IMG/VR virus record: IMGVR_UViG_3300030419_008158
Coordinates: 1-64,000 of that record
Reading direction: 5' to 3' (one strand)
DNA length: 64,000 bases
The notes below the pieces were generated by a model. That model made no database searches and had not been told where the DNA came from. It saw nothing but the letters and a program-made list of their open reading frames with translations. Below, piece by piece: positions 1-63,355 of this stretch (its first letter is position 1; each line of letters opens with the position of its first letter). Both the position numbers and the translations under genes were made by a program.

Positions 1-111
1 GTGATCAAGCATCAAATACATCTCATCGAGAGGATTATATTCATATGCTTCTTGTAGCTTAGCTTTCTCTTCTTTAATGATTCGTCTGAGTTGTCTTTTT
101 GATATTTTCAT
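1..111 (-). CDS. Small protein with MKI(S/T)KRQL leader, partial (runs off window)
   Basis: Not in ORF track. Manual translation from ATG at 111: MKISKRQLRRIIKEEKAKLQEAYEYNPLDEMYLMLDH...; ATGA overlap with the stop of 108..338. Confidence 0.85.
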   Translation of the reverse strand, partial: MKISKRQLRRIIKEEKAKLQEAYEYNPLDEMYLMLDH

Positions 112-338
112 CTTGTCGGCCCCCGCAATTCGTCTTTAATGTCTCTGACCATTTTCTCCAAAGCAGCAAGGATATTGCGATTTGTTTCTGGATCTACTTC
201 ACCATAACCCACTTCGTCTTCAATGACATTGCCGAATGCAAGTTCCCACCAACCTGCGCCTGGCGGAAGCCTGGCTTCATGAAGTTTGGCCTTTTCTTCT
301 TTGATGATTCTTCTCAATTGCCTTTTAGTAATCTTCAC
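108..338 (-). CDS. Small protein with MKITKRQL leader (putative internal virion protein)
   Basis: MKITKRQLRRIIKEEKAKLHEA; GGAGG upstream of GTG. Confidence 0.85.
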   Translation of the reverse strand: MKITKRQLRRIIKEEKAKLHEARLPPGAGWWELAFGNVIEDEVGYGEVDPETNRNILAALEKMVRDIKDELRGPTR

Positions 339-340
339 TG

Positions 341-586
341 TTATCCTCCAAGCCGGCTATTCAAAATCTGAACTGCCTGAGCTAGTGTCTTGTTTTCATC
401 ATCTGTAAAGCGACCATAGTTCTGGTCGATAAGCATTTCCAAATCCAGGATAGTATCACCAGCAAATGAATCAAACTTTTTCGCCATGGCTTTTTCTTCA
501 CTAGAGTCCAAATATCTCTCTGAAACAAGCTTGGCCCTTTCTTCTTTGATGATTCTTTTTAGTTGTCGTTTGGTGATTTTCATCAT
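341..586 (-). CDS. Small protein with MKITKRQL leader (putative internal virion protein)
   Basis: MMKITKRQLKRIIKEERAKLVSE; TAATG coupling to upstream gene. Confidence 0.85.
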   Translation of the reverse strand: MMKITKRQLKRIIKEERAKLVSERYLDSSEEKAMAKKFDSFAGDTILDLEMLIDQNYGRFTDDENKTLAQAVQILNSRLGG

Positions 587-1155
587 TAGTTTTCCAGTTC
601 TGTTTTTACTCTCTGTTGCAAGAGATAGACATTTTCTTCGTGTGAATTAGCAGTCTGTGCAAGAAAATCATTTAATCCTAAAGACAAAGATCCTGCTGAC
701 TCAAGCTCATAAAACATTGTCTCCACAAGCTCTAGAAAATTCTTTTCCATTTCTAGGCCTACAGAAGCCATAGCTAAAGACGTTATAGCAGGTGGTGATG
801 GGTAATTTCCCATAGCTTGTACAGCAAGATTTGTAATATGCATCGGGCATGCAATTCCTTCATCTCCTGTAACTCCAACTGCTTTTTCAATTGCAGCGTC
901 CATCTCTTCTTGTATTTTTAGATAAATCACTCCGAACAGATTGACATGATCGCCTCCAAACCCAGCTCCCCGAGAAACATTATGAGCACCATGAAACCAA
1001 AGATGCATAGCACGAAGCATGCCCAAATACTGCGAAAGACGCGTCGACAGCAAGCTACTGTCTGCCTCTTCAGACGCAAGATTGTCAAGTGCTTTTGCAA
1101 CAAAGGAAGCTTCTACAGCGTCATCTGCCGGACATTCATTAATTTTACGATCCAT
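586..1155 (-). CDS. Dps/ferritin-like protein
   Basis: HLWFHGAHNVSRGAGFGGDH...IY...EMDAAIEK resembles the Dps HWNVxGxxFxxLH...DxxAER signature. Confidence 0.7.
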   Translation of the reverse strand: MDRKINECPADDAVEASFVAKALDNLASEEADSSLLSTRLSQYLGMLRAMHLWFHGAHNVSRGAGFGGDHVNLFGVIYLKIQEEMDAAIEKAVGVTGDEGIACPMHITNLAVQAMGNYPSPPAITSLAMASVGLEMEKNFLELVETMFYELESAGSLSLGLNDFLAQTANSHEENVYLLQQRVKTELEN

Positions 1156-1738
1156 GAAAATCCTCTTCTCCTAATTGAGCAAAGACTTCTGCTTCACCCG
1201 GAAGATCTTCACCTTGACGCTCAAGCTTATACTCTAGATACTCTCGAACTGAGTTCATCATCATTTTTGCTTGTGCAATTTTATATTCACACCACTGTGG
1301 AAGATCGTCTTCGTCATTGAGAAGCTGGTGTAAACGATAAGAATCTACAGCAATGTTTCTCAAAGCTCCGCGGGCCATTCTTCCCTCACGTGCGTCACTC
1401 ACAACGTTTCCGTGATCTAACATTCTGCCAGCATCATGGGTCTCATTGATCGGATTTGTTCGTGTGTATGGTTTTAGGGGATATAGTCCACCTGTCTCAT
1501 CCGCGGGTGTATATTGATTTTGAGCTCGCAGACGATACTGCTCTTGCTTGGCATGCTGTTTTACTTTTTCTGCCATGTAAAGGTCACAGCCATGATCTCT
1601 CATGAGATCAGCTTCGGATACGACCAAAAGCTCAGACAGCTCTGTCGGCCTGAGCTTGGCATGGCAAAGAGCTTTTACAACTCCAAGCTCGAGGTCCTTT
1701 TTTGCTTCTAAAAGCAGGCTTTTTTTAGTGTTTGGCAT
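1145..1738 (-). CDS. Hypothetical protein, likely virion head-associated
   Basis: GAGG before ATG 1738; EGRMARGAL...DDLPQWCEYKI helical domain; LLE/INE motifs; GATATTTA motif upstream. Confidence 0.6.
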   Translation of the reverse strand: MPNTKKSLLLEAKKDLELGVVKALCHAKLRPTELSELLVVSEADLMRDHGCDLYMAEKVKQHAKQEQYRLRAQNQYTPADETGGLYPLKPYTRTNPINETHDAGRMLDHGNVVSDAREGRMARGALRNIAVDSYRLHQLLNDEDDLPQWCEYKIAQAKMMMNSVREYLEYKLERQGEDLPGEAEVFAQLGEEDFHGS

Positions 1739-1760
1739 GTTTTTCCTCACTTTGTGAATC

Positions 1761-1768
1761 TAAATATC
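1761..1768 (-). promoter_or_regulatory. Putative phage late promoter GATATTTA
   Basis: Same 8-mer recurs upstream of five other structural-type genes. Confidence 0.55.
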
Positions 1769-3025: not shown

Positions 3026-3718
3026 TTAGTCTTCGATTCCGAAGCGCATTTTCACAATAAGTTTCTCTCTCTCAGTAAGCGAGGACAAAACTTCATTAAT
3101 TTTTGCTGAAAGTCTTTCTCGATCAATTCTTTCATCAGGGCTCGGCTCTCTGGCCGGAATAACATCGGCAAGAGTTCGATTTCCACCCTCAGAAGGAAAC
3201 ATTGGCTTATCGAGCGCAATAGTTCTAGATGCAGACTGTCGCAAAGATCGAAGTGTATCCGGTGTGGTACCGAATTTTTCTGCAGTCTCCAAATCTGTAG
3301 GTTTTCGACCCATTTGTGACTCAAATGCATTTTCAAACTCAGAAATTTTATAAAGCTTTGAAAATGCATTTGACGGTAAATCAATCGTACCGGAGTTAGC
3401 GGCGATGTAAGCTCTTACAGCTGCTTGTATCCACCAATACGCGTAAGTTGAAAACTTAAAGCCCTTTGACCAATCAAACTCATCTACTGCTCGAGTGAGA
3501 CCCAGAACAGATTCTTGAAAAAGATCATCAATATCTACACCGCGATTGGTGTATTTCTTGACAACACTTAGCGCAAGACGTAAGTTTGCCTGTATCATCT
3601 TTTCTCTTGCAGCATTGTCGCCTTTTTCAATACGCTTGGAAAGTTCGATCTCTTCCTCACGAGTCAACAACTTTGTGTCGCCTACGTGATCAAATAGTGA
3701 ATAAGATGTTGAGTTCAT
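3026..3718 (-). CDS. Sigma-70 family factor (RpoD/RpoS-like regions 1.2-4.1, no 4.2 HTH)
   Basis: LLTREEEIEL; ANLRLALSVVKKY; DLFQE; GFKFSTYAYWWIQ; ends LTEREKLIVKMRFGIED*. Confidence 0.92.
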   Translation of the reverse strand: MNSTSYSLFDHVGDTKLLTREEEIELSKRIEKGDNAAREKMIQANLRLALSVVKKYTNRGVDIDDLFQESVLGLTRAVDEFDWSKGFKFSTYAYWWIQAAVRAYIAANSGTIDLPSNAFSKLYKISEFENAFESQMGRKPTDLETAEKFGTTPDTLRSLRQSASRTIALDKPMFPSEGGNRTLADVIPAREPSPDERIDRERLSAKINEVLSSLTEREKLIVKMRFGIED

Positions 3719-3966: not shown

Positions 3967-5580
3967 TTAGACACTGTCGAAATAAGCAACATTGGAATCG
4001 ACACCGTTGTCGTATTCCTCTGTTATTATACACCCAATAGACAACAAATTACACGCAACTGATAAACTATGTTCGACAGCAGAAACTACGACTGCGTGTG
4101 GATCGAGTATTCCTAAGTCAAACATGTCTCCATACTTATCGTTCTTGCCGTCATATCCGTATGTGTCGGCAGTTCTATTTACTTTTTGAACGACAAGATC
4201 TGCAGATACGTTACAGTTAGCGGCAATTTGTCGGAGCGGGGACTCCAATGCATCTAAAAATGCAACAGCACCTACATCAAAAGAGTCTCTTGCCTTGTAG
4301 CGCTTTCTAACTCTCTTTTTAGCCCTAGTCAATGCCACACCGCCTCCTGGCTGGACACCTTCTTTGAGGGCAGCTCGGCATGCATGAATCGCATCGTCGA
4401 CTCTATCACGCCTTTCTATCATCTCAGCTTCAGTTGCGCCGCCCACTTGAAGCACTGCGATACCATCGCTAAGCCTTTTTAGTCTTCGATCTGCTATTTT
4501 TTTATCATCTAAGCTGGCTGCTGGGTCGTTCATGACTGCCTTTGCCGAACTTTGTTTTTCCTTGACTTGCTCTGTGTGTTGCGTTCCAAAAAGAAGTGTT
4601 GTCTTATTTGTTACAGTCGCTTTTTTAACTCTTCCTAAAACTTCTTCTAGCTCATCTTTTTTTATAGGATGTTTTGCATCAGTAACAATTTTTGCGCCGA
4701 CTAATGCTGCAATATCTTGCAGTGCTGTAACTCTTGCAGAAGCAAACTCGGGTGACTTTATCACACAAACCTTTAGGCCCCCCTTTACTCTGTTCAAAAC
4801 CAAGGCCTGTAATGCTTCTCCTCCCACAGCATTGCAAATTATAAGAAGGCTTCCTCCAGATGCTGCTGTCTTTTCCAGCACCGGAATAATTGTCGAAACA
4901 GATGTAAGCTCGTCACTGATTATCAAAATGTCAGGGGACTCTAGTTCGGAAACTTGCTTTGATGTGTCGGTTACAAAATAAGGTGACTCAAAACCCCTGT
5001 CAATATAGGTGCCCTCAACCATGGTAAGTGTCGTATCATAGCCTTTTGCATCCTGAACTGAAACTGCTCCGTCGGCGCCGACTTTCTCAATCGCACTGCT
5101 TATTATTTCACCCAATTCCTTGTCGCCATTGGCCGAAATAACTGCTACATCACGAAGAGTATCAGGCGTGATGTCAACTTTTGTATTGTTGAGCTCTTCA
5201 ACAACTCTAGCAGCAGCTTCACGCATTCCTGACAGGACTTCGACAACTGAGTGGCCTGCAGAAATTACTTTTTCACCGTTGGCGACAATTTCCTGGGCGA
5301 GAACAGTTGAAGTTGTTGTTCCATCTCCTGCAACAGATGCACTTCTTTGTGCTGCTTCTCTTACAAGAGCAGCGCCTGCATTCTCATATGAATCTTTGAG
5401 CAAAATTGAATTTGCAACAGTTACACCATCTTTAGTAAGATGCGGAACATTGCCAGGTCTGCAAATGGCAACTGTTTTTCCCATGGGGCCTAATGTTATT
5501 CTTACTGCATCCGACAGTTTTTTAACACCAACTAAAAGCTTTTCTCTTGCTTCGGAGTCAAATAAAATTTCAGAATTCAT
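3967..5580 (-). CDS. groEL: GroEL-like chaperonin
   Basis: TLGPMG, TKDGVTVA, GDGTTT, VGGATEAEM, PGGG motifs. Confidence 0.95.
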   Translation of the reverse strand: MNSEILFDSEAREKLLVGVKKLSDAVRITLGPMGKTVAICRPGNVPHLTKDGVTVANSILLKDSYENAGAALVREAAQRSASVAGDGTTTSTVLAQEIVANGEKVISAGHSVVEVLSGMREAAARVVEELNNTKVDITPDTLRDVAVISANGDKELGEIISSAIEKVGADGAVSVQDAKGYDTTLTMVEGTYIDRGFESPYFVTDTSKQVSELESPDILIISDELTSVSTIIPVLEKTAASGGSLLIICNAVGGEALQALVLNRVKGGLKVCVIKSPEFASARVTALQDIAALVGAKIVTDAKHPIKKDELEEVLGRVKKATVTNKTTLLFGTQHTEQVKEKQSSAKAVMNDPAASLDDKKIADRRLKRLSDGIAVLQVGGATEAEMIERRDRVDDAIHACRAALKEGVQPGGGVALTRAKKRVRKRYKARDSFDVGAVAFLDALESPLRQIAANCNVSADLVVQKVNRTADTYGYDGKNDKYGDMFDLGILDPHAVVVSAVEHSLSVACNLLSIGCIITEEYDNGVDSNVAYFDSV

Positions 5581-50675: not shown

Positions 50676-53600
50676 CTAAAATCCGGGAATTCCCGGGCCT
50701 TCCTTGGGTCCGGCGCCTCTTCGAGATGCTTGCTCGACGACCTTGATAGCCTCACTGTAGGCTTCCTCGTTAGCAGTGACTTCTAATTCTTTTTCATCAT
50801 AAACACCGCCGAACGAGGTCTGGTGCGGATCATTTCTATCAGACACCAATTTTCCGGTTGGGTGTGATAGTGCTCTAGTTCTTCCCATGTAATCTAAACC
50901 AACTGGCAGGTCGTAAATTGGAGCAAATCCCATTGTAATAGAGACAGACTTGGGCGCTTTTCCAAGCTTAGAATCCACCTCCCATGTGCTTTCTGAGTAG
51001 TCCAGTGCCATGTTTGTTATGACACCCGCCAGACCTTTTCCTCTGGTCGAGTTAAACGACCTCACTATTGCGTTATTATTCTCATTAAAGAACTTCTGGG
51101 CATCTGTTACCCACGTTTCGGTATCAGTGTCCGCATCGAAACCGGATTTTTCTTCTGCAGCTTTTTGCACAGCAGTTTTTTTGTCACCTTCGAACTGTAT
51201 ACCATCTCTCAGCAGCAACCTATCGTGGACATTATTGAATCTAAGCACTGTGATATCTTTAAGTTTAACTTTGATGGCCTTGCTTTGTCGGGCGTTGTAG
51301 AGTTTGAATGTACCCTTTATCTTCCAGCTCAGCTTGCCCGTGTTGCCGAAGGCGTCGCCGAGTTTGCCAAACAAACCACCTTCCCTGTCTTCACCCGAAT
51401 CATACACTAAGTAAGAGTCGGATTTTAGCGTAACAGCACCGCTCTCGACGTAGTCGGTACCGGAAAAATTACCATATTTATTTGCTGTGTCTAAATCTTC
51501 TTGATATGCACCGTCGAGGTTGACTGTGACTGGACCGTTTGCATCAAAGCGATACTTTCCGGCTTTGACTTCATCGTAAAATTTTCCAAATGTCTTCGCG
51601 TCCGGATACCCTACTGAGGCGTCTAGTGCCAAATTCCTGAGTCTGTTAATTTCTTTGTTCAGCTCTTCTTTGTACGCCTTCAGGCCCCCCAACGCTTTTT
51701 TTGAATCCATTCCGTCGTACTTGAAAGTTCCAGCTTCCTCTGTATATCCAAAAAGAGACCGAAGTGCAGTAGTGCTGTAGTTAGATTTTAGCACATCGCC
51801 CAATCTAATTCTGATCACTGGAGAAGCTGCAGGAACTTGAGAAAAAGGTTGTATAAAGCTTACTTCTTTGTCGCCCTTGAGTGTTCTCTGTACGCCTTTT
51901 GAGTATTGTGGGTAAAGCATTGTCACGAGTTTATTCACTGTGTACCAGAGAGACGTGTAGTCCTCGGGGCCAAATGCTATCAGCTTGAAAGTCAAGTTTA
52001 TAGTTCTGTCTGTATTAGAGTGAATTCTCACGGGATCTTGACGACCGTAAGAATTGATCGAATTATAATTGACAGCGTACTGCTCGTCAAAAGATGTTAC
52101 AAATGCCGGCATTGAAATTATTTCGTATGTTCGAAGATCGTGAAAGTAGAAGGGCATATACTCAGCATCGAGTGCCATCTCCATTTTTCTCACATTGTCT
52201 TTTGTCGCCTCTAGCTTTCTTATGGGACTTAATCCTGTAAGCCTGGAGTCAGCAACAGAAGAGGCGGGAAAAGTGCTCAAAGACAGCGGGTTTTTTGCAT
52301 TTCCTCCAAAACGAGACACATTTTGTCTCATTCGGGCCACAGAAACCATGTTGGACACAGCTTTGCTGTCGCCACTAAGATCTTGTGCCCTTGGAATAAG
52401 AGGGACATTTAGTCCCTTGAGATCATACAGACCATCGTCTATTGAGACTCCTGGTGGCCCAAATAGCGATTTTATATTCGCGTCCCCTACCATTGCAGAA
52501 ATCATAATAAACTGATAAAGCTGAGAATTTACTAGCTCGTCTACAGCTGGAAAAAATGATTCTAGGGCACCTACACCTGTGGGTGCACCGCCTAAAACAG
52601 CAAATGCGCTGACCACTCGCTGGCCGCTCATTATTATCTGCCTCATAAAGTTAGCATAGTAAGCGGGTGACTTAAATAAATTGAAAGCAAAGTCTATAAG
52701 ACCCACACCTGTGGCCATTGATGCTTCAACATCATCACGAACAAAATTTCCAGGAAAACCGATCATTAGCAACATTCCTGAGCCCACACAGTCTCCAAAG
52801 TCATTGTCAGTGTTGGGTATTCTAAACATTGCGTACATTTCGTCAATAAACGTTTGGAGCGGTCCCGGTGCTTCAAATCCGCCGCCGCTTTCTTCGTCGC
52901 GCGGGAGCATTTGATATCGACCATATCTCATTTCCGCAGGGTTTCGACCGTCCTTAGGATACTTCTTTTCATTTTGAACATTAGAAGCAATCTCTTGTAT
53001 GACTAATCCTGCTATCATCATTGCCGCAATAGAGAGCACACCAATGTAAAGCATTCCAACTGAATCTAATAGAAGTCCGTTACCAAAAGGCTCCAAGTAA
53101 TTATTAAGTTGTGAGTGACTCACTCCGTTGTACGGTGAGTCATCGAGCCCAGAACCTCTTACTGCAAGCCGCGTACTAGTACTAGAATCGTCACCAAGCT
53201 GAAGTGACATAAAAGTATCGTTTCCTGTTGCACCTCTTAGTTTAGCCGCCATCGGGCCTGAGGCTCCATCACCGGTTGCCATAGACTTAAACCGAAGCGC
53301 AGCTAAATCAACACCGGCGAGACCCATCTGTTCGAGGGGGTTCGCCAAAACTGCCCCTGCCGAGGACAAATCTTCAAGAAGACCTAGTGAGCCCCCATAA
53401 TCTCCGGTCGCGCGGACTAGCGCAGCATTTGCCATGTGTGACATGTCGTCCGCGGTCACACGAGTTCCACTTATGTCACCTCCGCTCGCAATGGAGGGAT
53501 CGGGAGCTGTCAAAAATTTTCCTAGAACTCGTTGGAGCGTGAAGAGGCCCTGTGTCGCTGTACCCTCATCTTTAGACATTGAATCTCTGATAAAGGGAGA

Positions 53601-56600
53601 TTTCTCCGACGGAGAGTATAAATTTTCATTCTTGAGCATGTCAAGAACAGCTTGCATGACACCGGTGGGATCATCGTCCTCTTTGTAGGTGTCCAAATAA
53701 CTTGTAGGAACTCCTTTTCCCGGTGCAGGAACACCCGCGGGCAGATTTTTTGGATTCCCTAGTTCAACTAGTGATGAGCCTAAACGCCCGTCCTCTTCAG
53801 AATCGCTATTGTGCGTTCTAAGCTTGTCTTTGTTGATAAGCGCCGCGGCGCCGGCGAGACCTGTGCCGACAGAGCCGTCAATTGACCTGCCTTGGTCGTT
53901 TACAAAGAACCTGTCTTCATCTCCTGGAGTTATTGGTATTTCGGATCTTCTTTCTAGAGGCGTCTCAACAAGTGGCCCTGTTTCTATGCTAAGAGACGGT
54001 CCGTACTCGTTGGACTTGGCGCCGGCGAATGAATAAATTTCGGTATATGCCTCTATCCATTCATCGCCGTCATCAAGAAATTTTGCTTTTGACTTCTCAA
54101 ATTTACCTAGATCCTGTTGAGCTGTAAACACCGCTGCTAATTTTTCCGGCCCTGCAGCATTCTCATCTGTTGCTGCTGGAAAATCAAACGTTGCGACAGA
54201 CCCCACTGCGTCGCCTGTCAAGTAAGCATCGCCCGGGACATATGGATTTTGACTGTTATCTAAGCCGAGTTGAACTTTTTCGGCAAACGCAGAAGGATCA
54301 AAAGAGTCACTTGTGAGCGGTTTTGCCATCGGGACTTTAATGACAGCATCGTCCTCAGAAGACATAACCTTATCGATCTCATAGTCTCCATCGGTAAAAA
54401 AGTTAGGTCCGACGCCAGGAGAGGGAACCATCTCTGTATCTTGTGCAAAAGAAAGATCACTCTTGTCTGTAAATGAAGGTCCAGCTGACTTTGGAAGTGT
54501 TGGAGCATCATTCATCGAAGATTCTATTTCGGGTCTATGAGTGTTTAGAGATAGCTTGGCAGATCCTTCATCGCCCAACTGCAGTGTGGATATGCTGTCG
54601 GCGGAAAAAGAATGCCCTCCTTGATCATCATAGACACCTAGTCCACCCAAATCACCCGGAGGTAGTGTGACTTCTTGTTCGAGGCCAAAACTAGTCTTGC
54701 TAACGTCGTGAGGTACAAAATCTAAATTAGTAGTGTGTTTACTGGCAGGAGTGAATTTATTGCTTTGTCCGAGCTGAACTTGAACCTGTTCAGAAATCGA
54801 CTCTGCACTTTCTGGAAGCTTACTTCCTAATTTTTCAGGTGTACCTCCCGTCTTATCAATAAATTCTGTTACTTGATCTTGTGTAAAGAACGTCCCTAAT
54901 GTTTGCCCGTTATCGAAATCACTGCCCGGAGCGCTGTCAATGCTCGGCAGCCCTAGGCCGGACTCTTCTATGTTCGAAGTGTCTGCAGCAAAAAACGCGT
55001 CGCCTTCACCTGAAATTATTTTTGTGTCTGCAGACTTTTCCAGCTGTGCTTTCTTTACGTCCGGATCCAGCGCCGCGCCGTCCTGAAGCTCTTGTGGGTG
55101 GTATGGGTGGTGACCCAAATAGCCGGTCGTTGGTTTTCCTGCTATTTGTGTCTGTTGCAAATAAGCATTATGGACAGGAGATCGACCCGGAGATTCCTCA
55201 AAGACACCTGGTGTTGGCTGTCTTCCCGGATAGTTCACATCATTTGTATTGCTGGAAACAACAGATTTTGGCCAAATGAAGTCTCCTGCGACTGTTGCAC
55301 TTGGAACGTGCTCTTCACCTCCGGGTGTGTTTGGATTCGATGAGTCTGTGAGCTGGAGCGCTGTATGAAGGTTGTGTTCAATCACTCTAGTCTGACTGAA
55401 TATATCATGACCCTTTAACGCAGGAGATCCTCCAGTCTTGTCGAGAACGAGATTTAATTGAGCCTGGGTGAAGAACGTCCCTAGAATTTGTCCAGAATCT
55501 GATCCCGGAGGATTGGCTCCTGGTGTACCGGTAGACTTAGGAACCCCAAGCCCAGAACTCTGTAGCCCTTCCGGAGCTGTCTCCGCAGTTAATTCATCAT
55601 TGTCTGCGTCCACAGAAGACGCAAATACTTTTCCAAGGCCACTTGCAGTAGGTGCGATAGAGTCACCCACTTTATTTGAGTCAAAGTATGTATCTGCTGG
55701 GTCTGGATGGTATGTGTTGGAATGTGTAGCTTCTCGATTGTCCCCCAAGTAGTCGTCTGTAGGGCCGTCTGAGCTTGCATCATTTAACAGTTTTTGGACA
55801 GTTGCAGCATTAGATGTGTTAGTGACAGGATCAGTGCTGGCTTCTGCTTCAAATTTTCCAAGCGTGCTTTGATCTTTAACGTAAAGCTGGTCTGTGCTGT
55901 CTTTGTCAGCACCCGTATTCTTAGATGAGTATGGACTAGCTGCTTCTGATGGGTCGTAGGGATTGTTATCAGCAAGTTGTGTCTGTGTGTATTCTGTCAG
56001 CAGACCTTCAGCCTCACCTACTTTTTCTGCCTTAGACATAAGATCATTGGGTGCAGCAGTTATTTGCAGATCTGCTATTTGATCAACTGTATAAAAGCTG
56101 TTGCCCACACCGGGTGTCGATTCTCCGTCCCTATAAGCTCCACCTGTAAAAGTGAAGTCTGACACTTTTTTGAAAAAATTATCTAATTCGCCGGCTTGAA
56201 CGTGAGTATTTGGGTCTGTAAAATTCGGAGCATCGCCATGGTTTACCGGGTAATTTGTGTTTGTTCCCAGCCCAGGTGCACCCGAAGACCGATCATATGC
56301 CTCTTTAGCCAATTCTTCCGGCGTTCTTTTGTCGACTACATTGCTGTGTGCACCTCGAACATTTTGCTCTCCAGGAATTCCTATATCTTCCGCTGTAGAT
56401 TTGATTGTGTTACCTACAGCGTCTACAGACAATACGGACTCGTACTCACCTATGGTGTTGCCGACATCGGGCTTATAAATGTTGCCTACACCTAGCTGTG
56501 TCTGTACTGATGTTGCAGCTTTTCCCACTTTTATTGGAGCAAATAGATCGCTTCCCTTCTTATTAGAAACCCCTCCTGTTTTATCTAAAACTTCGTCTAT

Positions 56601-57584
56601 TTGATCTTGTTCGAAAAAAGTGCCTAATTTCTGCCCATTTTGTGAATAAGTTCCGGGAGTCGATGCAACATCAGGAACACCTAGGCCGGTCTCCTTTAGA
56701 GTTTCGGGCAAAACCTCAGGTGTCTCGGGATCATCGTCGTGATCGACAGTGGAGGCAAACACATTTCCAGTTCCGTTGGAAACTGGAGATATAGAATCAC
56801 CCACTTTGTGAGCATCAACTATTGTCCCTTCTGAAGCTGTGGGTTTGTATGTGTTTGTCGACCAACTATTATCCAACCCAGATGCTTTTGATATAATATT
56901 AGAGAGATGACCTGTAGCAGGTCCTCCGGGGTGACCTCCCTTGTAAAGCTCATCTGCAAGAGCGTCTGACGGCACTGTGGATTTGGGATTGAGCTCCTCA
57001 TACTGCCCGGGAGAAGCAGGACCAGAACCGTCCGGACTATAATCATTTCGATCAGAAAGTTGGGTAGAAGTTGCTGCTTTAAGTTTATCTTTTTTGCTCG
57101 AAAGATCACTTCCAAGTTTTCCCGAATCGGATCCTGTCTTATCGATAAGGTCAGATAACTTTTGACCATCAGCATCAGATGTAAAGAAATTAGGTGTTAC
57201 GCCGACCGCTGTATTTGTCTCCTGATACGTTCCCCCAGTAAAAGACAACTCCGGAGCTTCTTTGTAAATATTTCCATCGGCGCCTCCCGTAGGGACAGGC
57301 AAAGCATTACCCACAACTGAAGAGACTGGTGTAAAGTTGGCTGGATTTGGATAAAAATCGTTTCCAGTATTGCCTCCGCGGCGGCCTGTCTGCATCATAT
57401 CATCAGCAAAGTCAGACATCTGATTTTTTACAACAGGGCTTACATCATTGCGCCCGTCAGGCGCAGGCTCGGTAATGTCTACACCTTCGAAAGTCGGTGT
57501 GGCTTTGTTCGCTCCGTCCCACAGTGCGCCAGGATTTGCAAGCCCTAGCGAAAGCGATTTCTCTTCAAGAGTTTTCTCAGCCAT
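50676..57584 (-). CDS. Giant baseplate/tail-tube-initiator-like protein with N-terminal repeats
   Basis: C-terminal FHDLRT...YGRQDP...RTINLTF...LYPQY...PVIRIRLGD...GVIT; ~190-aa repeats (DKTGG) in N-terminal half. Confidence 0.65.
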   Translation of the reverse strand: MAEKTLEEKSLSLGLANPGALWDGANKATPTFEGVDITEPAPDGRNDVSPVVKNQMSDFADDMMQTGRRGGNTGNDFYPNPANFTPVSSVVGNALPVPTGGADGNIYKEAPELSFTGGTYQETNTAVGVTPNFFTSDADGQKLSDLIDKTGSDSGKLGSDLSSKKDKLKAATSTQLSDRNDYSPDGSGPASPGQYEELNPKSTVPSDALADELYKGGHPGGPATGHLSNIISKASGLDNSWSTNTYKPTASEGTIVDAHKVGDSISPVSNGTGNVFASTVDHDDDPETPEVLPETLKETGLGVPDVASTPGTYSQNGQKLGTFFEQDQIDEVLDKTGGVSNKKGSDLFAPIKVGKAATSVQTQLGVGNIYKPDVGNTIGEYESVLSVDAVGNTIKSTAEDIGIPGEQNVRGAHSNVVDKRTPEELAKEAYDRSSGAPGLGTNTNYPVNHGDAPNFTDPNTHVQAGELDNFFKKVSDFTFTGGAYRDGESTPGVGNSFYTVDQIADLQITAAPNDLMSKAEKVGEAEGLLTEYTQTQLADNNPYDPSEAASPYSSKNTGADKDSTDQLYVKDQSTLGKFEAEASTDPVTNTSNAATVQKLLNDASSDGPTDDYLGDNREATHSNTYHPDPADTYFDSNKVGDSIAPTASGLGKVFASSVDADNDELTAETAPEGLQSSGLGVPKSTGTPGANPPGSDSGQILGTFFTQAQLNLVLDKTGGSPALKGHDIFSQTRVIEHNLHTALQLTDSSNPNTPGGEEHVPSATVAGDFIWPKSVVSSNTNDVNYPGRQPTPGVFEESPGRSPVHNAYLQQTQIAGKPTTGYLGHHPYHPQELQDGAALDPDVKKAQLEKSADTKIISGEGDAFFAADTSNIEESGLGLPSIDSAPGSDFDNGQTLGTFFTQDQVTEFIDKTGGTPEKLGSKLPESAESISEQVQVQLGQSNKFTPASKHTTNLDFVPHDVSKTSFGLEQEVTLPPGDLGGLGVYDDQGGHSFSADSISTLQLGDEGSAKLSLNTHRPEIESSMNDAPTLPKSAGPSFTDKSDLSFAQDTEMVPSPGVGPNFFTDGDYEIDKVMSSEDDAVIKVPMAKPLTSDSFDPSAFAEKVQLGLDNSQNPYVPGDAYLTGDAVGSVATFDFPAATDENAAGPEKLAAVFTAQQDLGKFEKSKAKFLDDGDEWIEAYTEIYSFAGAKSNEYGPSLSIETGPLVETPLERRSEIPITPGDEDRFFVNDQGRSIDGSVGTGLAGAAALINKDKLRTHNSDSEEDGRLGSSLVELGNPKNLPAGVPAPGKGVPTSYLDTYKEDDDPTGVMQAVLDMLKNENLYSPSEKSPFIRDSMSKDEGTATQGLFTLQRVLGKFLTAPDPSIASGGDISGTRVTADDMSHMANAALVRATGDYGGSLGLLEDLSSAGAVLANPLEQMGLAGVDLAALRFKSMATGDGASGPMAAKLRGATGNDTFMSLQLGDDSSTSTRLAVRGSGLDDSPYNGVSHSQLNNYLEPFGNGLLLDSVGMLYIGVLSIAAMMIAGLVIQEIASNVQNEKKYPKDGRNPAEMRYGRYQMLPRDEESGGGFEAPGPLQTFIDEMYAMFRIPNTDNDFGDCVGSGMLLMIGFPGNFVRDDVEASMATGVGLIDFAFNLFKSPAYYANFMRQIIMSGQRVVSAFAVLGGAPTGVGALESFFPAVDELVNSQLYQFIMISAMVGDANIKSLFGPPGVSIDDGLYDLKGLNVPLIPRAQDLSGDSKAVSNMVSVARMRQNVSRFGGNAKNPLSLSTFPASSVADSRLTGLSPIRKLEATKDNVRKMEMALDAEYMPFYFHDLRTYEIISMPAFVTSFDEQYAVNYNSINSYGRQDPVRIHSNTDRTINLTFKLIAFGPEDYTSLWYTVNKLVTMLYPQYSKGVQRTLKGDKEVSFIQPFSQVPAASPVIRIRLGDVLKSNYSTTALRSLFGYTEEAGTFKYDGMDSKKALGGLKAYKEELNKEINRLRNLALDASVGYPDAKTFGKFYDEVKAGKYRFDANGPVTVNLDGAYQEDLDTANKYGNFSGTDYVESGAVTLKSDSYLVYDSGEDREGGLFGKLGDAFGNTGKLSWKIKGTFKLYNARQSKAIKVKLKDITVLRFNNVHDRLLLRDGIQFEGDKKTAVQKAAEEKSGFDADTDTETWVTDAQKFFNENNNAIVRSFNSTRGKGLAGVITNMALDYSESTWEVDSKLGKAPKSVSITMGFAPIYDLPVGLDYMGRTRALSHPTGKLVSDRNDPHQTSFGGVYDEKELEVTANEEAYSEAIKVVEQASRRGAGPKEGPGIPGF

Positions 57585-57804
57585 TTCTTTCTCTTCTACT
57601 GACGACTTCTTTGGCAAACTCGGGATTTTTCATATTTTCTTTGAACATATCTAAAAAATTAAAATGATGCGAAAGGTCTGCCAAAAGCTTTTCTTTTACT
57701 GTAGGAGTCATATTTGTCATGAGTGCCTCAATGTACCCAGCAAGAGGATTTCCCTCTTCTTTCAACTGCTTTAACCGATTTTCGACGTTCTCTTTCTTAC
57801 TCAT
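57577..57804 (-). CDS. Small hypothetical protein
   Basis: AAGGAG SD before ATG 57804. Confidence 0.6.
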   Translation of the reverse strand: MSKKENVENRLKQLKEEGNPLAGYIEALMTNMTPTVKEKLLADLSHHFNFLDMFKENMKNPEFAKEVVSRRERNG

Positions 57805-57817
57805 ATTCTTCTCCTTA

Positions 57818-60800
57818 TTACGGTGCTTTTTCTTCCTTCTTGATTCCAGCCTCAGCGCCGACTTCCATGTACTTCGCATCCTTACCAGCTGTGAGAGGAA
57901 CTTTGCCGATTGCATTTCCGAGCTTGCCAGCGTCGATGGTGACGTAGACCTTCATGTTAATTCCGTCCATGTAATGTTTAATGTTCACAGTTCCGCCATT
58001 TTTGGCGGCGGATATTGATTCGACGACAGCCGTTCCCTTTCCAGATAGTCTTCGACCTGCCGATGCTATTTGGTTAATAGCTTTCGCGTAATCTGATGCT
58101 GTTGATTTGAACTTTTTAATGTCTGCTTGAGAAACTTTTGCTTCTCTTATTGTCGATTTAGCTGTCTTGAAGAATTTTTTGACCTTTTCCATATTTTTTA
58201 TTGCGCCGTCGAGCTTTTTACCCGTAGCTTCGGTATCTATTTTCTTTTCATTGAATATCGCGACCATTTTTGTCAAGAGAGTACTACCACCATCAGCAAA
58301 AGACTTAATTTGGGACAGCTTCTTTTTGCCTATAATAGTAAGCTTCATGCCATTGATATCTTTTATCTCTGACTGTAAAAGTGAAAGATGTGTAGTTATT
58401 TTTCCAACTGCATGTGTTATGTTCGACAGATTGTCCATTGCCTTGTCGATCCAGGCGATTGCTTCCGACATCTTCATGGGAGGCAGCTTCTGTGCCTCAT
58501 CTTGCGTGGGAACTGTGGTGTTCATCTCAGCTGCAGCAGCAGCTTCTGCTTCAGTTGTGAGAGGCATAACGCCCTTTGCTAGTGCAGCCGGAATTTTGGC
58601 TATCTTTGACGTCATGTCGTAGAGGTCACACATCAAACATGCCAGATCAAGCCTTCGAAAAAATTTCAGATTCTTATCAATAACTGATTTTAGTTTTCTA
58701 ACACTGGAGGCAATGTTCTCCAGCGCGTTGGCCGCCGGTGTAATCACATTGTTTACGGCTTGAACACCTTTTAGACCGGCGCCCTCATCTAGTTTTTTAG
58801 TGGCAAATTCGCCAATTTCGGATGCGTCTATGGCTTTGCCGATTGCTTCCCCAATGCCCAGTGCTTTTTTGAAGAGCTCTGTTGCTTGCTTTTCTACAAT
58901 TGCAGGTTTCATTCTGCTAAGAGCCTTCTGGGCGCGCTTTAGCTGATTCGGAATGTCGGAAAGCTGTTCAATTCTAAGGACTGTCTGTCTCTGCTGCTCC
59001 AGCTTTGTAAGTTTTGCCTTTTGAGCCTGCTCCGGCGTAACTTTATCCTGCTCACCCAGCAGTTCTTTGTATTCTTTGATTCGGCCCTGCACCCACAAAT
59101 TCTTCAGCCTACCCTTTACTGACGGGGGAATGTCAGATTCCAATGAAATCATCCACATTCCAAGGGCGGAGTCCATGTCCTCGACGCCATAGAGGCGCTT
59201 TGTTTCCTTTTCAACAGCTTTTTTTGCATTTGTAGTCACTTCTGTGGTGATTCTGTTTCTTTCAGTTTCGATGCTCTTTGTGAGTGTGCCGGCAAATTCT
59301 TTGTACTTTGCGAGCTGATATTGTACTCTTTTCCGCATCTTGACATTTGTTTTTAGGTTGAAGCGTTGGCCTCTGCGCAGTCCTAACGCATCTTTCCCCG
59401 TCCCAACGTATTCTCCCGTCGATAGCGCATCGGTTAGGTGCTTAATGACGTCCTTCGATTTCTTCAGCATCTCGCCGGCTTTGCCCTCCCACCGAGCCCC
59501 ACCGCGCCCTTCGGCGACGAAGGTTGCTTCTTCCGCATTTTGCACAACTTGATCGATAATATGCTGTTGCGATTTGACTTTTGCCTTCACTTTTTTCGCG
59601 ATCTCCGATTCGAAAAGCTTCGAGAACTTCATGAAATCGGGATCGCCGGGCGTTTGAATTCCCGCATATTTCAACCAGAAATCAACATCTCGCTGTGTTG
59701 TACCGTAGGCTTTTATCTCTTCTGGGGTGGGAGCTGACGCAGCAAACCGAATCATTTCGTACATCTTTTGCGGCAAACCAGCAAGTGTATAGCTTTTTAT
59801 TGTATCTTCCAGTCGCTTCTCCATGGCACTTACGTTAACACCAGTCTTTTTGCCGGTGATAATAGCCTCTGCCAGCTGCTCTACAGTCCAACCGTCCTTC
59901 AACGCTTGATTGTGTGCATCTTTAGCGTTGTGCTCCATTTCTTTCTTGAGAGACTCTACACCATTTTCGCTTAAAATAGCGTCAGCAATAATTTTATAGA
60001 TCTTGTGGAACTTTTTGCCCGGGCCCATCTCCTCAACCACGGCCTCGGGTATGGTGATGATGTCCCCGATGAACTGGACACCTGCTCTCTGAAGTGTTCT
60101 AATTTGGGTTAGTCCCAAATAATCTTTAATCTTTTTGGCGCCAAAACCGGCGACCTGGTCGGTGTCCCACTCACCAAGTTCTCTATCTATATCCTCTTTT
60201 AGCTTAAAAAGGAAGCCTGATGCTTCTGTGGCGAGCTTGATGCGATCGTCCTGATTCTTTTTGAGCGATCTGACAGTGGAATCAGCCACATCAGCGCTAG
60301 CTGACATCATCCCAAAGATTTTTTTCTGTTGTTCTGTCATATTGTCGCCGAGGATGGCAGATACTTGTGCGATACCAGTCGCCAATTCATTTGACTCTGC
60401 AATCAACCCTCTATACACGTTGTTGTGATTACGAGCTAGGCCAGCAAAGTGTTTATACATCCGATTTTGATACTTTTCAATGCTCCCGTGAGTGTCTCTT
60501 GCCAGTTTCTCAACAACCTTGTTTGTGCTAAAGAATGCATCCTGAACTTCGTCTGTTGACCACGCGCCGAACGTCAAAGAGCTCACAACACCCGACAAGA
60601 AACGCTGACCGCCCTCTCCTTTTTTGGCATTATAGGCTTCATAGAGGCCGTAGCCAATATCAAACAAAAACGGTATGCCTTTGGAAAGGGCACCCTTGAG
60701 AATTTTGCTCCCAACTGACAGAGTTCTGGTGACCATTCCTGTGGCTGTTCTAGTTGCTTGGCCCGTCACTGATTTCGTCAGCTTTTTTGCTGATTCTGTC

Positions 60801-63349: not shown

Positions 63350-63355
63350 GTTCAC

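What the first reader, a model, noticed from the sequence alone, without database searches (positions are those of the whole stretch)
1..586. Tandem small proteins sharing a ~22-aa N-terminal leader on unrelated bodies
Seen: three consecutive genes start MKI(T/S)KRQL(R/K)RIIKEE(K/R)AKL followed by xE or xxE, then diverge completely; the third is missed by the ORF track. Known: T4 internal proteins carry a short capsid-targeting leader removed by the prohead protease after [LI]xE. Inference: a modular address tag for loading diverse cargo, such as anti-defence effectors, into the head. The conserved DNA could also promote cassette shuffling.
Basis: partly seen in the sequence, partly recalled or inferred. 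Interest (0 to 1): 0.6.

Follow-up and report, generated by a model that had tools for sequence, protein, structure and literature searches.

The report
Shared head-targeting leader on phage proteins
An uncultured marine giant phage puts the same 14-22-residue N-terminal tag, ending in the cut site of its T4-type head protease, on about 40 otherwise unrelated small proteins. This is most likely a much expanded version of the T4 system that loads internal proteins into the capsid.

Summary
The window is the first 64 kb of a 284-kb marine virus contig. Three minus-strand genes (341-586, 108-338, 1-111, the last cut by the contig start) begin MK(I)(T/S)KRQL(R/K)RIIKEE, and their bodies show no detectable homology.

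About 40 copies occur genome-wide, all on the coding strand. The same leader heads hundreds of different bodies in related uncultured phages.

- **Cut sites.** The near-invariant core (Leu8, Ile11, Ile12, Glu14) gives an I-x-E site. Nearly half the proteins carry a second L-x-E at residue 21/22, exactly where conservation ends.
- **Head machinery.** The genome encodes a T4 gp21-family prohead protease with its catalytic His and Ser, and a gp23-like capsid protein with a matching L-K-E|A site. Two head-core genes beside the protease have leader-like N-termini.
- **Selection.** Synonymous codons vary freely, so selection acts on the peptide.
- **Cassette exchange.** The two contig ends show one body swapped between conserved leaders.

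Best reading: a capsid-targeting propeptide removed by the prohead protease (confidence about 0.6). This is an analogue of the T4 CTS, not a homologue. Packaging, cleavage and cargo function are untested, and the bodies are acidic, unlike the basic T4 internal proteins. I rate it a new variant of a known kind.

The parts
341..586 (-). Leader gene A (80 aa from the ATG at 583, 81 aa from the ATG at 586). The leader is residues 1-22 (518-583). The body is predicted as a helical hairpin.
   Evidence: ORF. Fifteen metagenomic orthologues at 56-89% identity in alignment A2. AF2 model: helix 5-20, low-confidence linker 23-30, helices 29-54 and 61-78, mean pLDDT 66.
108..338 (-). Leader gene B (76 aa, GTG start, GGAGGA ribosome-binding site). 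The leader is residues 1-21 (276-338) and ends L-H-E.
   Evidence: One orthologue in a related contig has a conserved body end. Its body is replaced by an unrelated one in the homologous locus at the other contig end.
1..111 (-). Leader gene C: only the first 37 codons, cut by the start of the contig. The leader is residues 1-21 (49-111) and ends L-Q-E.
   Evidence: It is 91% identical in DNA to the start of a complete 91-aa gene at G000 283844-284119. A 3,079-base Logan contig of the probable source run ends on window 1-60 and so extends past the window start.
542..583 (-). Leader core of gene A (residues 1-14, ending I-K-E): the predicted first prohead-protease site.
   Evidence: Column counts over 432 leader proteins: Leu8 429, Ile11 403, Ile12 417, Glu14 428.
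297..338 (-). Leader core of gene B (residues 1-14).
70..111 (-). Leader core of gene C (residues 1-14).
586..1155 (-). 189-aa gene directly upstream. Its stop overlaps the start of gene A, so it is probably in the same transcript. It has no leader.
   Evidence: No Pfam hit. Weak PHROG 'DNA binding protein' match, E 1.3e-3.
1145..1750 (-). 201-aa gene, the first of the tightly packed run 1750 -> 1. It has no leader and no family match.
1761..1768 (-). Promoter-like motif GATATTTA(G), 17 nt upstream of the gene at 1750. The same motif precedes the portal, a head-core gene, a baseplate-wedge gene, a tail-sheath gene and two other leader arrays.
   Evidence: Its function as a late promoter is inferred, not shown. 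The exact motif has no coding-strand bias in the leader-array loci of relatives (30 vs 24), though it does precede the scaffold-like gene in two of nine head modules.

Best explanation
The shared N-terminus is a capsid-targeting propeptide.

Proposed mechanism, all steps inferred:
1. Late in infection, about 40 small proteins are made together with the head genes.
2. Their common leader (residues 1-14, often extended to about 22) docks them to the scaffolding core of the prohead.
3. The T4 gp21-family prohead protease cuts after Glu14 (I-x-E), and in many proteins again after the Glu at 21/22 (L-x-E).
4. This frees the diverse bodies inside the head, from where they would enter the host cell with the DNA.

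Because the address is a short self-contained module, any ORF placed behind it becomes cargo. The leader together with the neighbouring gene's start also marks the boundaries at which bodies are exchanged between genomes.

Shown here:
- the tag and its strictly N-terminal position;
- protein-level selection on it;
- the placement of the cut-site motifs;
- the protease and capsid homologues;
- leader-like N-termini on head-core genes;
- the clade-wide spread;
- one cassette swap.

Not shown: docking, cleavage, packaging, ejection and what the cargo does.
For: 1. **Scale and position.** There are 40 copies at E <= 0.01 in this genome, all on the coding strand. In 80 loci of related IMG/VR contigs there are 456 copies, and 445 of them have ATG/GTG/TTG exactly at leader position 1.
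2. **Cut-site logic.** [LI]xE ends at residue 14 in 413/432 proteins. A second site ends at residue 21/22 in 199/432, against 1.3% per residue in the bodies. Conservation collapses right after residue 22. Orthologues of gene A keep an I/L-x-E (V-S-E in some) at the leader/body junction even where the rest of the leader decays, as in P0015. Glu14 is invariant across 22 orthologues of a 206-aa member down to 48% identity.
3. **Matching enzyme.** A Pfam Peptidase_S77 / PHROG head maturation protease is present. It is 34% identical to T4 gp21, with the His85 and Ser140 equivalents aligned. T4 gp21 cuts after L/I-x-E, and the first 10 residues of IPIII suffice for packaging (PMC9026906).
4. **Capsid protein.** The gp23-like capsid protein has V-L-K-E|A at residue 60. 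That is 27 residues before the block that aligns with T4 gp23 residue 98. T4 is cut 33 residues before that block.
5. **Link to the head core.** The two genes downstream of the protease begin with leader-like sequences (HMM E 3.5e-6 for the first). Their orthologues in nine related genomes keep them.
6. **Co-occurrence.** All 17 large related records carry 1-26 copies (reversed-pattern control 0), and 15 of 17 have the S77 protease.
7. **Selection on the peptide.** Leu8 uses six codons, and a median 46% of identical-residue codons differ synonymously between copies.
8. **Accessible tag.** AF2 places the leader as a separate helix joined to the body by a low-confidence linker.
9. **Possible co-expression with structural genes.** A GATATTTA(G) motif 6-45 nt before start codons precedes the portal, a head-core gene, a baseplate wedge, a tail sheath and three leader arrays.
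10. **Size.** Median protein length is 104 aa. T4 IPI, IPII and IPIII are 95, 100 and 193 aa.
Against: - There are no proteomic, expression or biochemical data. Everything is inferred from sequence.
- [LI]xE is a three-residue motif that arises easily in K/E/L/I-rich helices. The IIKEE core could be conserved for binding something else.
- 31 of 37 bodies are acidic (median pI 5.0, against a genome median of 5.9). T4 IPII and IPIII bodies have pI about 9.6.
- The leader has no sequence similarity to the T4 CTS.
- The promoter-like motif is well placed in this genome only. The exact motif shows no coding-strand bias in the relatives' array loci, 30 vs 24.
- No cultured phage with virion proteomics carries the family. 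tblastn against 50,697 phage records found nothing, possibly because of low-complexity masking.
- Three ORFs carry a second in-frame leader in mid-protein. The model accommodates this only by assuming internal cleavage.
Confidence: 0.6

Rival explanations
1. The proteins are packaged but are not cargo. They are accessory prohead-core or scaffold components, like T4 gp67, gp68 and gp22. They use the leader to co-assemble into the core of a very large head, are then cut up by the protease and expelled, and nothing is delivered to the host.
For: - The bodies are mostly acidic, like T4 core proteins and unlike T4 internal proteins.
- Conserved head-core genes beside the protease share the leader style.
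- T4 gp67 contains L-I-K-E-E-K-I-A, close to I-I-K-E-E-K-A-K of the leader.
Against: - About 229 unrelated body clusters occur among 429 proteins, and copy number is very variable (1-26 per record). Neither is expected of structural fillers.
- Beyond the leader, [LI]xE density in the bodies is only 1.3% per residue, so the bodies are not built for shredding. The scaffold-like 543-aa protein has 16 such sites.
- Individual bodies are under ordinary purifying selection across orthologues.
Confidence: 0.15
2. The leader is an address or docking helix for something other than the capsid. It could be a common partner such as a phage or host complex (chaperonin, polymerase, nucleoid, ribosome), or a shared oligomerisation or regulatory handle. 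The I-x-E and L-x-E matches would then be incidental to a charged helix.
For: - The motif is short and K/R/E/I-rich, and no direct link to virions exists.
- The genome encodes its own GroEL-like chaperonin and a sigma factor a few kb away.
- Some members have only the first site and no extension.
Against: - This does not explain why the only other genes with this N-terminus are the conserved head-core genes next to the protease.
- It does not explain why the second L-x-E sits exactly at the conservation boundary.
- It does not explain why Glu14 is the most invariant residue (428/432; invariant in alignment A4).
- There is no hydrophobic signal segment: only 1 of 39 proteins has a TM-like stretch, so export is unlikely.
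Confidence: 0.15
3. The three genes, and the wider family, are ordinary paralogues that diverged beyond recognition except at a constrained N-terminus. On this view there is no modular tag on unrelated bodies.
For: Tandem arrays of small genes are the usual product of duplication. A few members share extended similarity after the leader, for example the three genes at G000 186966, 187371 and 187784.
Against: - Body lengths run from about 40 to 260 aa with different predicted folds.
- hhalign probabilities between body profiles are below 1%.
- Orthologues of single members are well conserved along the body, so fast decay is not the rule.
- The contig-end comparison shows an abrupt switch from 96% identity to no similarity at the leader/body boundary, then back at the next gene's start. 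That is the signature of replacement, not drift.
Confidence: 0.05
4. The conserved element works at the nucleic-acid level. It could be a shared translation-initiation or regulatory RNA site, or simply a recombination hotspot, with the peptide secondary.
For: The element sits at the start codon. One cassette exchange has its boundaries in or near it.
Against: - Median DNA identity over the first 45 nt is 73%, and the median longest exact run is only 9 nt.
- Synonymous sites vary freely while the residues are kept.
- The variant leader of the 484-kb phage LR756508 keeps the residue pattern, not the bases.
Confidence: 0.03

Closest known systems
Phage T4 internal proteins IPI, IPII, IPIII (and Alt) with their capsid targeting sequence (CTS)
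   Same: - A 10-20-residue N-terminal propeptide is shared by otherwise unrelated small proteins.
- It ends in the L/I-x-E site of the gp21 prohead protease.
- In T4 it targets the proteins to the scaffolding core, and the genes lie in variable regions.
- A gp21 homologue and a gp23-like capsid protein are present here.
   Different: - There is no sequence similarity between the leaders (MKTYQEFIAE in T4, against MKITKRQLRRIIKE here).
- About 40 genes per genome here, against 3-4 in T4.
- There are often two nested sites.
- The bodies are mostly acidic instead of basic.
- Head-core genes carry a related N-terminus.
- Nothing has been shown experimentally.
T4 prohead core proteins gp67, gp68 and gp22
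   Same: They are acidic head-core proteins encoded beside the protease and cut at L/I-x-E. T4 gp67 contains L-I-K-E-E-K-I-A, resembling the I-I-K-E-E-K-A-K of the leader. The genes after this phage's protease have leader-like starts.
   Different: The T4 core proteins are single conserved genes and are shredded at many sites. The family here is large and diverse, with few sites beyond the leader. The gp67 resemblance covers 6-8 residues and may be chance.
Ejection and inner-body proteins of phiKZ-like giant phages (phiKZ, 201phi2-1, SPN3US), including SPN3US head paralog family B with 20 members
   Same: Many head-internal proteins are processed by a diverged gp21 homologue C-terminal to Glu. 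The head protein families are large and variable in number (PMC5694885; PMC9026906).
   Different: - Their cleavage motif is S/A-x-E.
- Their propeptides are mostly over 100 residues.
- Their family members are true paralogues along their length, not one tag on unrelated bodies.
- This phage has a T4-type capsid protein and is not phiKZ-like.
Leader-plus-variable-core gene families, such as RiPP precursors like prochlorosins, and polymorphic toxin cassettes
   Same: They follow the same design principle: a conserved N-terminal recognition or trafficking module, a hypervariable C-terminal payload, many copies per genome, and exchange of payloads.
   Different: The bodies here are 40-260 aa folded or charged proteins, not short core peptides. 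No body matched a known enzyme or toxin family in Pfam or PHROGs. The setting is a phage head module with a prohead protease.

Membership tests
T4-type CTS-tagged internal head proteins | A short (10-20 aa) N-terminal propeptide is shared by proteins whose mature parts are unrelated. | tested here: met
   Leader residues 1-15(22) are conserved. Bodies are unrelated by BLASTP and hhalign.
T4-type CTS-tagged internal head proteins | The propeptide ends in the prohead-protease site L/I-x-E. | tested here: met
   [LI]xE ends at residue 14 in 413/432 proteins, and a second site ends at residue 21/22 in 199/432.
T4-type CTS-tagged internal head proteins | The genome encodes a gp21-family serine prohead protease. 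| tested here: met
   Pfam S77 at 91.8 bits and phrog_207 at E 9.8e-51. It is 34% identical to T4 gp21 with the His85 and Ser140 equivalents aligned.
T4-type CTS-tagged internal head proteins | The leader is homologous in sequence to the T4 CTS (MKTYQEFIAE / MKTFKEF...ITE). | tested here: not met
   The T4 ipI, ipII and ipIII N-termini read from NC_000866 share only the initial M-K with this leader. The leader profile finds nothing in T4.
T4-type CTS-tagged internal head proteins | The proteins are present in proheads and virions and are N-terminally processed. | not testable with these tools
   The phage is uncultured and no proteome is available. The complex prediction of protease with leader gave no answer.
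T4-type CTS-tagged internal head proteins | The leader alone is sufficient to package a foreign protein. | not testable with these tools
   This needs an experiment.
T4-type CTS-tagged internal head proteins | The mature parts are basic and DNA-associated. | tested here: not met
   31 of 37 bodies have pI < 6 and only 4 have pI > 8. T4 IPII and IPIII are at 9.6-9.7.
T4-type CTS-tagged internal head proteins | The genes are expressed late, together with the head genes. | tested here: inconclusive
   A GATATTTA(G) motif is shared with structural genes in this genome. The exact motif shows no strand bias in relatives' array loci. No RNA run holds the region.
phiKZ-type ejection-protein propeptides | Long (over 100 aa) propeptides cut at S/A-x-E. 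| tested here: not met
   The leader is 14-22 aa and its sites are I/L-x-E. The phiKZ motif is taken from PMC9026906.
Sec/Tat or lipoprotein signal peptides | A hydrophobic h-region follows a short charged n-region. | tested here: not met
   Mean hydropathy of the leader is -1.03 and its net charge is +5. Only 1 of 39 proteins has any TM-like segment.
RiPP precursor families with a shared leader | Short core peptides with an adjacent modifying enzyme. | tested here: not met
   The proteins are 43-258 aa long (median body about 80 aa), and no enzyme family was found among members or the neighbours scanned. Neighbouring genes were only partly scanned.

The most novel reading that the evidence does not exclude
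A whole clade of uncultured marine and environmental T4-related giant phages (160 to 484 kb) may run an open 'plug-in' protein-delivery system. A universal 14-22-residue tag, derived from or shared with the prohead-core proteins, would load dozens of interchangeable cargo proteins per virion, drawn from a pool of at least a few hundred families. The tag would also mark the boundaries at which cargo cassettes are swapped between strains. If so, roughly a tenth of the gene content of these phages is an injected, rapidly reshuffled effector arsenal whose functions are entirely unknown.
Probability: 0.4. Interest if true: 0.8.

Novelty: new variant of a known kind. Interest (0 to 1): 0.68.

Why it matters
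- **Function for dark matter.** If correct, about 10% of the ORFs of an abundant class of marine giant phages get a location (inside the head) and a time of action (first seconds of infection), using only a sequence rule. Pfam and PHROGs currently say nothing about these ORFs.
- **A directly testable list.** It gives candidate injected proteins, possibly counter-defence or host-takeover factors, together with a precise proteomic prediction: N-termini starting after Glu14 or after the Glu at residue 21/22.
- **Generality of the T4 CTS principle.** It would show that the principle is general and scalable, from 3-4 proteins in T4 to about 40 here.
- **How cargo sets evolve.** The leader-bounded cassette swap suggests a mechanism.
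- **A possible tool.** A short portable packaging tag from a different phage lineage could also be useful for protein delivery.

Tried and rejected
- **Complex prediction** of the prohead protease with residues 1-40 of gene A: 'no answer', score 0.01. This is evidence neither for nor against.
- **Pfam and PHROGs on 36 family members:** only one marginal DUF5824 hit and a few chance-level hits. The atlas search agrees on DUF5824, of unknown function.
- **Foldseek against the PDB** with the 206-aa member's model (pLDDT 78): no match at E <= 0.001. The 80-aa model of gene A is a helical hairpin at pLDDT 66, and I did not search with it.
- **tblastn of two members against 50,697 phage records:** no match even at E <= 10. 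The low-complexity filter may hide the leader, because a profile search did find one copy in Flavobacterium phage immuto.
- **Amphipathic helix:** the helical hydrophobic moment (0.78) is no higher than for shuffled leaders (0.70 +/- 0.35), so I do not claim amphipathicity.
- **T4 late promoter TATAAATA:** only 4 copies on the coding strand, so it is not used.
- **The GATATTTA motif in relatives:** no coding-strand bias in the array loci, so I treat promoter sharing as weak evidence.
- **Host clue from the scan of 185,579 species genomes:** only 4 MAGs from four different phyla, on contigs of 2 to 306 kb that look like misbinned phage. No host can be named.
- **Literature search** for the motif strings and for descriptions of such a family: nothing.
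- **Body clustering:** a 51-member cluster in the single-linkage clustering is an artefact of ORFs with a second internal leader. Cluster counts are therefore approximate.

Full report
**What is there.** The window is the first 64 kb of a 284,429-bp IMG/VR virus record (41.7% G+C, CheckV-complete, marine metagenome). At its very start lie three consecutive minus-strand genes:
- 341-586: 80 aa from the ATG at 583. A second ATG at 586 overlaps the upstream stop as TAATG.
- 108-338: 76 aa, GTG start behind a GGAGGA ribosome-binding site.
- 1-111: 37 codons, cut by the contig start.

All three start MK-I-(T/S)-K-R-Q-L-(R/K)-R-I-I-K-E-E-(K/R)-A-K-L, followed by VSE, HE or QE, and then diverge. BLASTP finds no similarity between the bodies. 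Profile-profile comparison of the bodies, using their orthologues from other contigs, gives probabilities below 1%.

**It is far bigger than three genes.** A degenerate DNA pattern for the core hits 24 times on the minus strand. It hits 0 times on the plus strand and 0 times for the reversed control. A 16-residue HMM finds 40 copies at E <= 0.01. They are placed as follows:
- an array at 271-284.4 kb, which continues into window 1-586;
- an array at 184.5-189.2 kb;
- singles at 226.9 kb and 82.0 kb.

Three of the copies are second, in-frame copies inside longer ORFs. Almost the whole genome is transcribed from the minus strand. None of 36 members matches a Pfam or PHROG family of known function. 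One carries DUF5824.

**Anatomy of the leader.** I pooled 432 leader proteins from this genome and 80 related loci.
- Leu8 (429), Ile11 (403), Ile12 (417) and Glu14 (428) are nearly invariant.
- [LI]-x-E ends at residue 14 in 413 proteins.
- A second [LI]-x-E ends at residue 21 or 22 in 199 proteins, against a 1.3% per-residue background.
- Conservation collapses right after residue 22.
- The start codon sits exactly at leader position 1 in 445 of 456 copies.

Selection acts on the peptide and not on the DNA. Leu8 uses six codons. A median 46% of identical-residue codons differ synonymously between copies. The median longest exact DNA run between two leaders is 9 nt.

AF2 models of two members show the leader as a separate N-terminal helix ahead of the folded body. 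It is joined by a low-confidence linker in one model and is itself low-confidence in the other. The leader is very hydrophilic (net charge +5) and is not a signal peptide. It is not significantly amphipathic either.

**The head machinery fits.** The genome encodes a Peptidase_S77 / PHROG 'head maturation protease' at 82430-83035. It is 34% identical to T4 gp21, and the catalytic His85 and Ser140 positions align. It sits in a T4-like head module:

large terminase - portal - p274 - protease - p134 - p153 - p97 - p190 - p209 - acidic coiled-coil 543-aa scaffold-like protein - gp23-like capsid protein.

T4 gp21 cuts after L/I-x-E, and the first 10 residues of IPIII suffice to load proteins into the head (PMC9026906; PMC3012670; PMC5694885). 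The capsid protein here has V-L-K-E|A at residue 60. That is 27 residues before the block that aligns with T4 gp23 residue 98, whereas T4 is cut 33 residues before it.

Strikingly, the only other genes with a leader-like start are p153 (MAKITKRMLKGIVKE..., HMM E 3.5e-6) and, more weakly, p97. Both lie just downstream of the protease. Their orthologues in nine related genomes keep these N-termini, with stacked V/L-x-E sites.

**Spread.**
- The exact DNA pattern occurs in at least 80 stretches of IMG/VR contigs.
- All 17 large related records examined carry 1-26 copies on one strand (control 0), and 15 of 17 have the S77 protease.
- The 429 leader proteins in those loci fall into about 229 body clusters, 162 of them singletons (approximate).
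- Individual bodies are conserved among orthologues (alignment A2 at 56-89%, A4 at 48-90% identity). Paralogues sharing only the leader therefore reflect modularity, not rapid decay.
- Orthologues of gene A keep an I/L-x-E (V-S-E in some) at the junction even where the rest of the leader degenerates.
- A variant of the leader, M(R/K)L(S/T)E(R/K)KLR(R/K)IVKEE...LxE, heads at least a dozen genes in the 484-kb uncultured phage LR756508.
- One copy (MKKSQLRQIIKEA) heads gene 190 of the cultured Flavobacterium phage immuto.
- T4, Microcystis phage Mel-JY01 and RM378 have none.
- Among 185,579 species genomes, only four MAGs carry the leader, on contigs that look like misbinned phage.
- I found no paper that describes the motif.

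**Cassette exchange.** The two contig ends are homologous. Window 281-392 matches G000 284318-284429 at 96% identity. This stretch covers the end of gene A, the spacer and the leader of the next gene. Window 1-114 matches 284009-284122 at 91%, covering the start, leader and first body codons of the following gene. The roughly 170-200 nt between the two matches, which is the body of the middle gene, is unrelated in the two versions.

In the probable source run, both versions exist as short alternative contigs between two long contigs. Either the genome is circularly permuted and the ends are two strain alleles of one locus, or they are tandem copies. In both cases one body was replaced, with the boundaries at the end of its own leader and the start of the next gene. 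This is one example. The short exact DNA runs between most leaders mean that homologous recombination at the leader is not obviously efficient.

**Expression hint.** In this genome a motif GATATTTA(G) lies 6-45 nt upstream of start codons. The core ATATTTA is present in 12 of 101 upstream spacers against 1.2 expected, and the full motif occurs 24 times on the coding strand against 5 on the other. It precedes:
- the portal, the head-core gene p97, a baseplate-wedge gene and a tail-sheath gene;
- the operon 1750 -> 1 that contains the window's three genes (motif at 1761-1768);
- the leader arrays at 187953 and 276948.

A different, sigma-70-like class (TTGTGTAA-N17-TATAATA) precedes the DNA polymerase gene and a block of genes at 190-216 kb. 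This suggests late co-expression. However, the exact motif shows no coding-strand bias in the leader-array loci of relatives, 30 vs 24, and no RNA data exist, so I weigh it lightly.

**Interpretation.** The most economical reading is a capsid-targeting propeptide system of the T4 kind, greatly expanded. The leader would dock the proteins to the prohead core, whose own components carry a related N-terminus. The gp21-type protease would remove it at Glu14 and/or the Glu at 21/22, and the bodies would stay in the head.

The in-frame double-leader ORFs fit a protease-processed design. Because the leader alone does the addressing, any ORF placed behind it would become cargo, which would explain the diversity.

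It is an analogue of the T4 CTS, not a homologue, because the two leader sequences are unrelated. It also differs from T4 in three ways: the bodies are mostly acidic, there are about 40 members, and there are two nested sites. T4 gp67 contains L-I-K-E-E-K-I-A, close to the leader's I-I-K-E-E-K-A-K. This may hint at a common origin in core proteins, or it may be chance.

**Rivals.**
- Packaged core or filler proteins that are degraded rather than delivered (0.15).
- A docking helix for a non-capsid partner (0.15).
- Fully diverged paralogues (0.05).
- A nucleic-acid-level element (0.03).

The evidence for and against each is given in the Rival explanations section. What the cargo does is unknown, and 'anti-defence' remains a guess.

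**Limits.**
- There is no virion proteome, no expression data and no biochemistry.
- The complex prediction gave no answer.
- The count of about 40 may include two genes counted twice if the contig ends are alleles.
- Cluster counts are approximate.

Noticed in passing
window 1-392 versus G000 284009-284429 (L012 13510-13930): The two ends of the contig are homologous except for one gene body, which differs completely. The boundaries lie at the end of that gene's leader and at the next gene's start. Logan contigs of the source run show both versions as alternative short contigs. Either the genome is circular with a strain-variable cassette, or the two versions are tandem copies.
   Followed up: partly
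G000 185415-186140, 273550-274326, 274326-275030 (L013, L012): Three ORFs carry a second leader copy in frame in mid-protein, two of them without a start codon in front of it. They look like two cargo genes fused into one precursor.
   Followed up: partly
window 3026-3718 and 3967-5580 (minus strand): The phage encodes a sigma-70-family factor (regions 1.2, 2, 3 and part of 4) and a full-length GroEL/Cpn60-type chaperonin a few kb from the leader genes.
   Followed up: no
window 7677 and 24103; G000 190-216 kb: A second promoter-like class, TTGTGTAA-N17-TATAATA, precedes the DnaE-like polymerase gene and a block of genes at 190-216 kb. It is distinct from the GATATTTA(G) motif found before structural genes.
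   Followed up: partly
window 50676-57617 and 57818-63355 (minus strand): Two giant ORFs of 2,313 and 1,845 aa have essentially no PHROG match. The second is preceded by the GATATTTAG motif, so it may be structural.
   Followed up: no
window 586-1155 (minus strand): The 189-aa protein just upstream of the leader genes has only a weak match to a PHROG 'DNA binding protein' family (E 1.3e-3). By eye its central helices resemble Dps/ferritin-like proteins, which I did not test.
   Followed up: no
G000 65116-68643, 68673-71822 and 262399-265743: There appear to be three tail-sheath-like genes of about 1,050-1,175 aa. Two are adjacent with similar N-termini, and the third, far away, matches PHROG tail sheath.
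   Followed up: no
L104, L105, L106, L107 (head modules of related records); Microcystis phage Mel-JY01 (L123 3146-3373): Several relatives have a small, very basic gene inside the head module just before the scaffold-like gene. A gene at the corresponding position in Mel-JY01 is annotated as ribosomal protein S21. This genome lacks it at that position.
   Followed up: no
L112 2782-3024 (T4 gene 67): The T4 prohead-core protein gp67 contains ...D-L-I-K-E-E-K-I-A-I..., a 6-8-residue resemblance to the leader's I-I-K-E-E-K-A-K-L. It may be chance or a trace of common origin.
   Followed up: partly
LR756508.1 (L127-L131) and Flavobacterium phage immuto MW353176.1 113144-113902 (L126): A sequence variant of the leader heads at least a dozen genes in a 484-kb uncultured phage. 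A shortened form heads one 252-aa protein of a cultured Baltic Flavobacterium phage, which could serve as an experimental handle.
   Followed up: partly
L114-L121 (genome contigs): Contigs bearing the leader are filed in MAGs of four different phyla (Methylococcaceae TMED69, 305,838 bp; Halobacteriovorax SP2999, 101,404 bp; and others). They are almost certainly misbinned phage contigs. The 101,404-bp contig has the same length as an IMG/VR record.
   Followed up: no
G000 283159-283842 (L012 12660-13343): This is the one strongly basic member (227 aa, body pI 10.2, net charge +29). It carries DUF5824, a phage-only domain that is elsewhere fused to cytidylyltransferase-like or zeta-toxin/AAA kinase domains.
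   Followed up: partly
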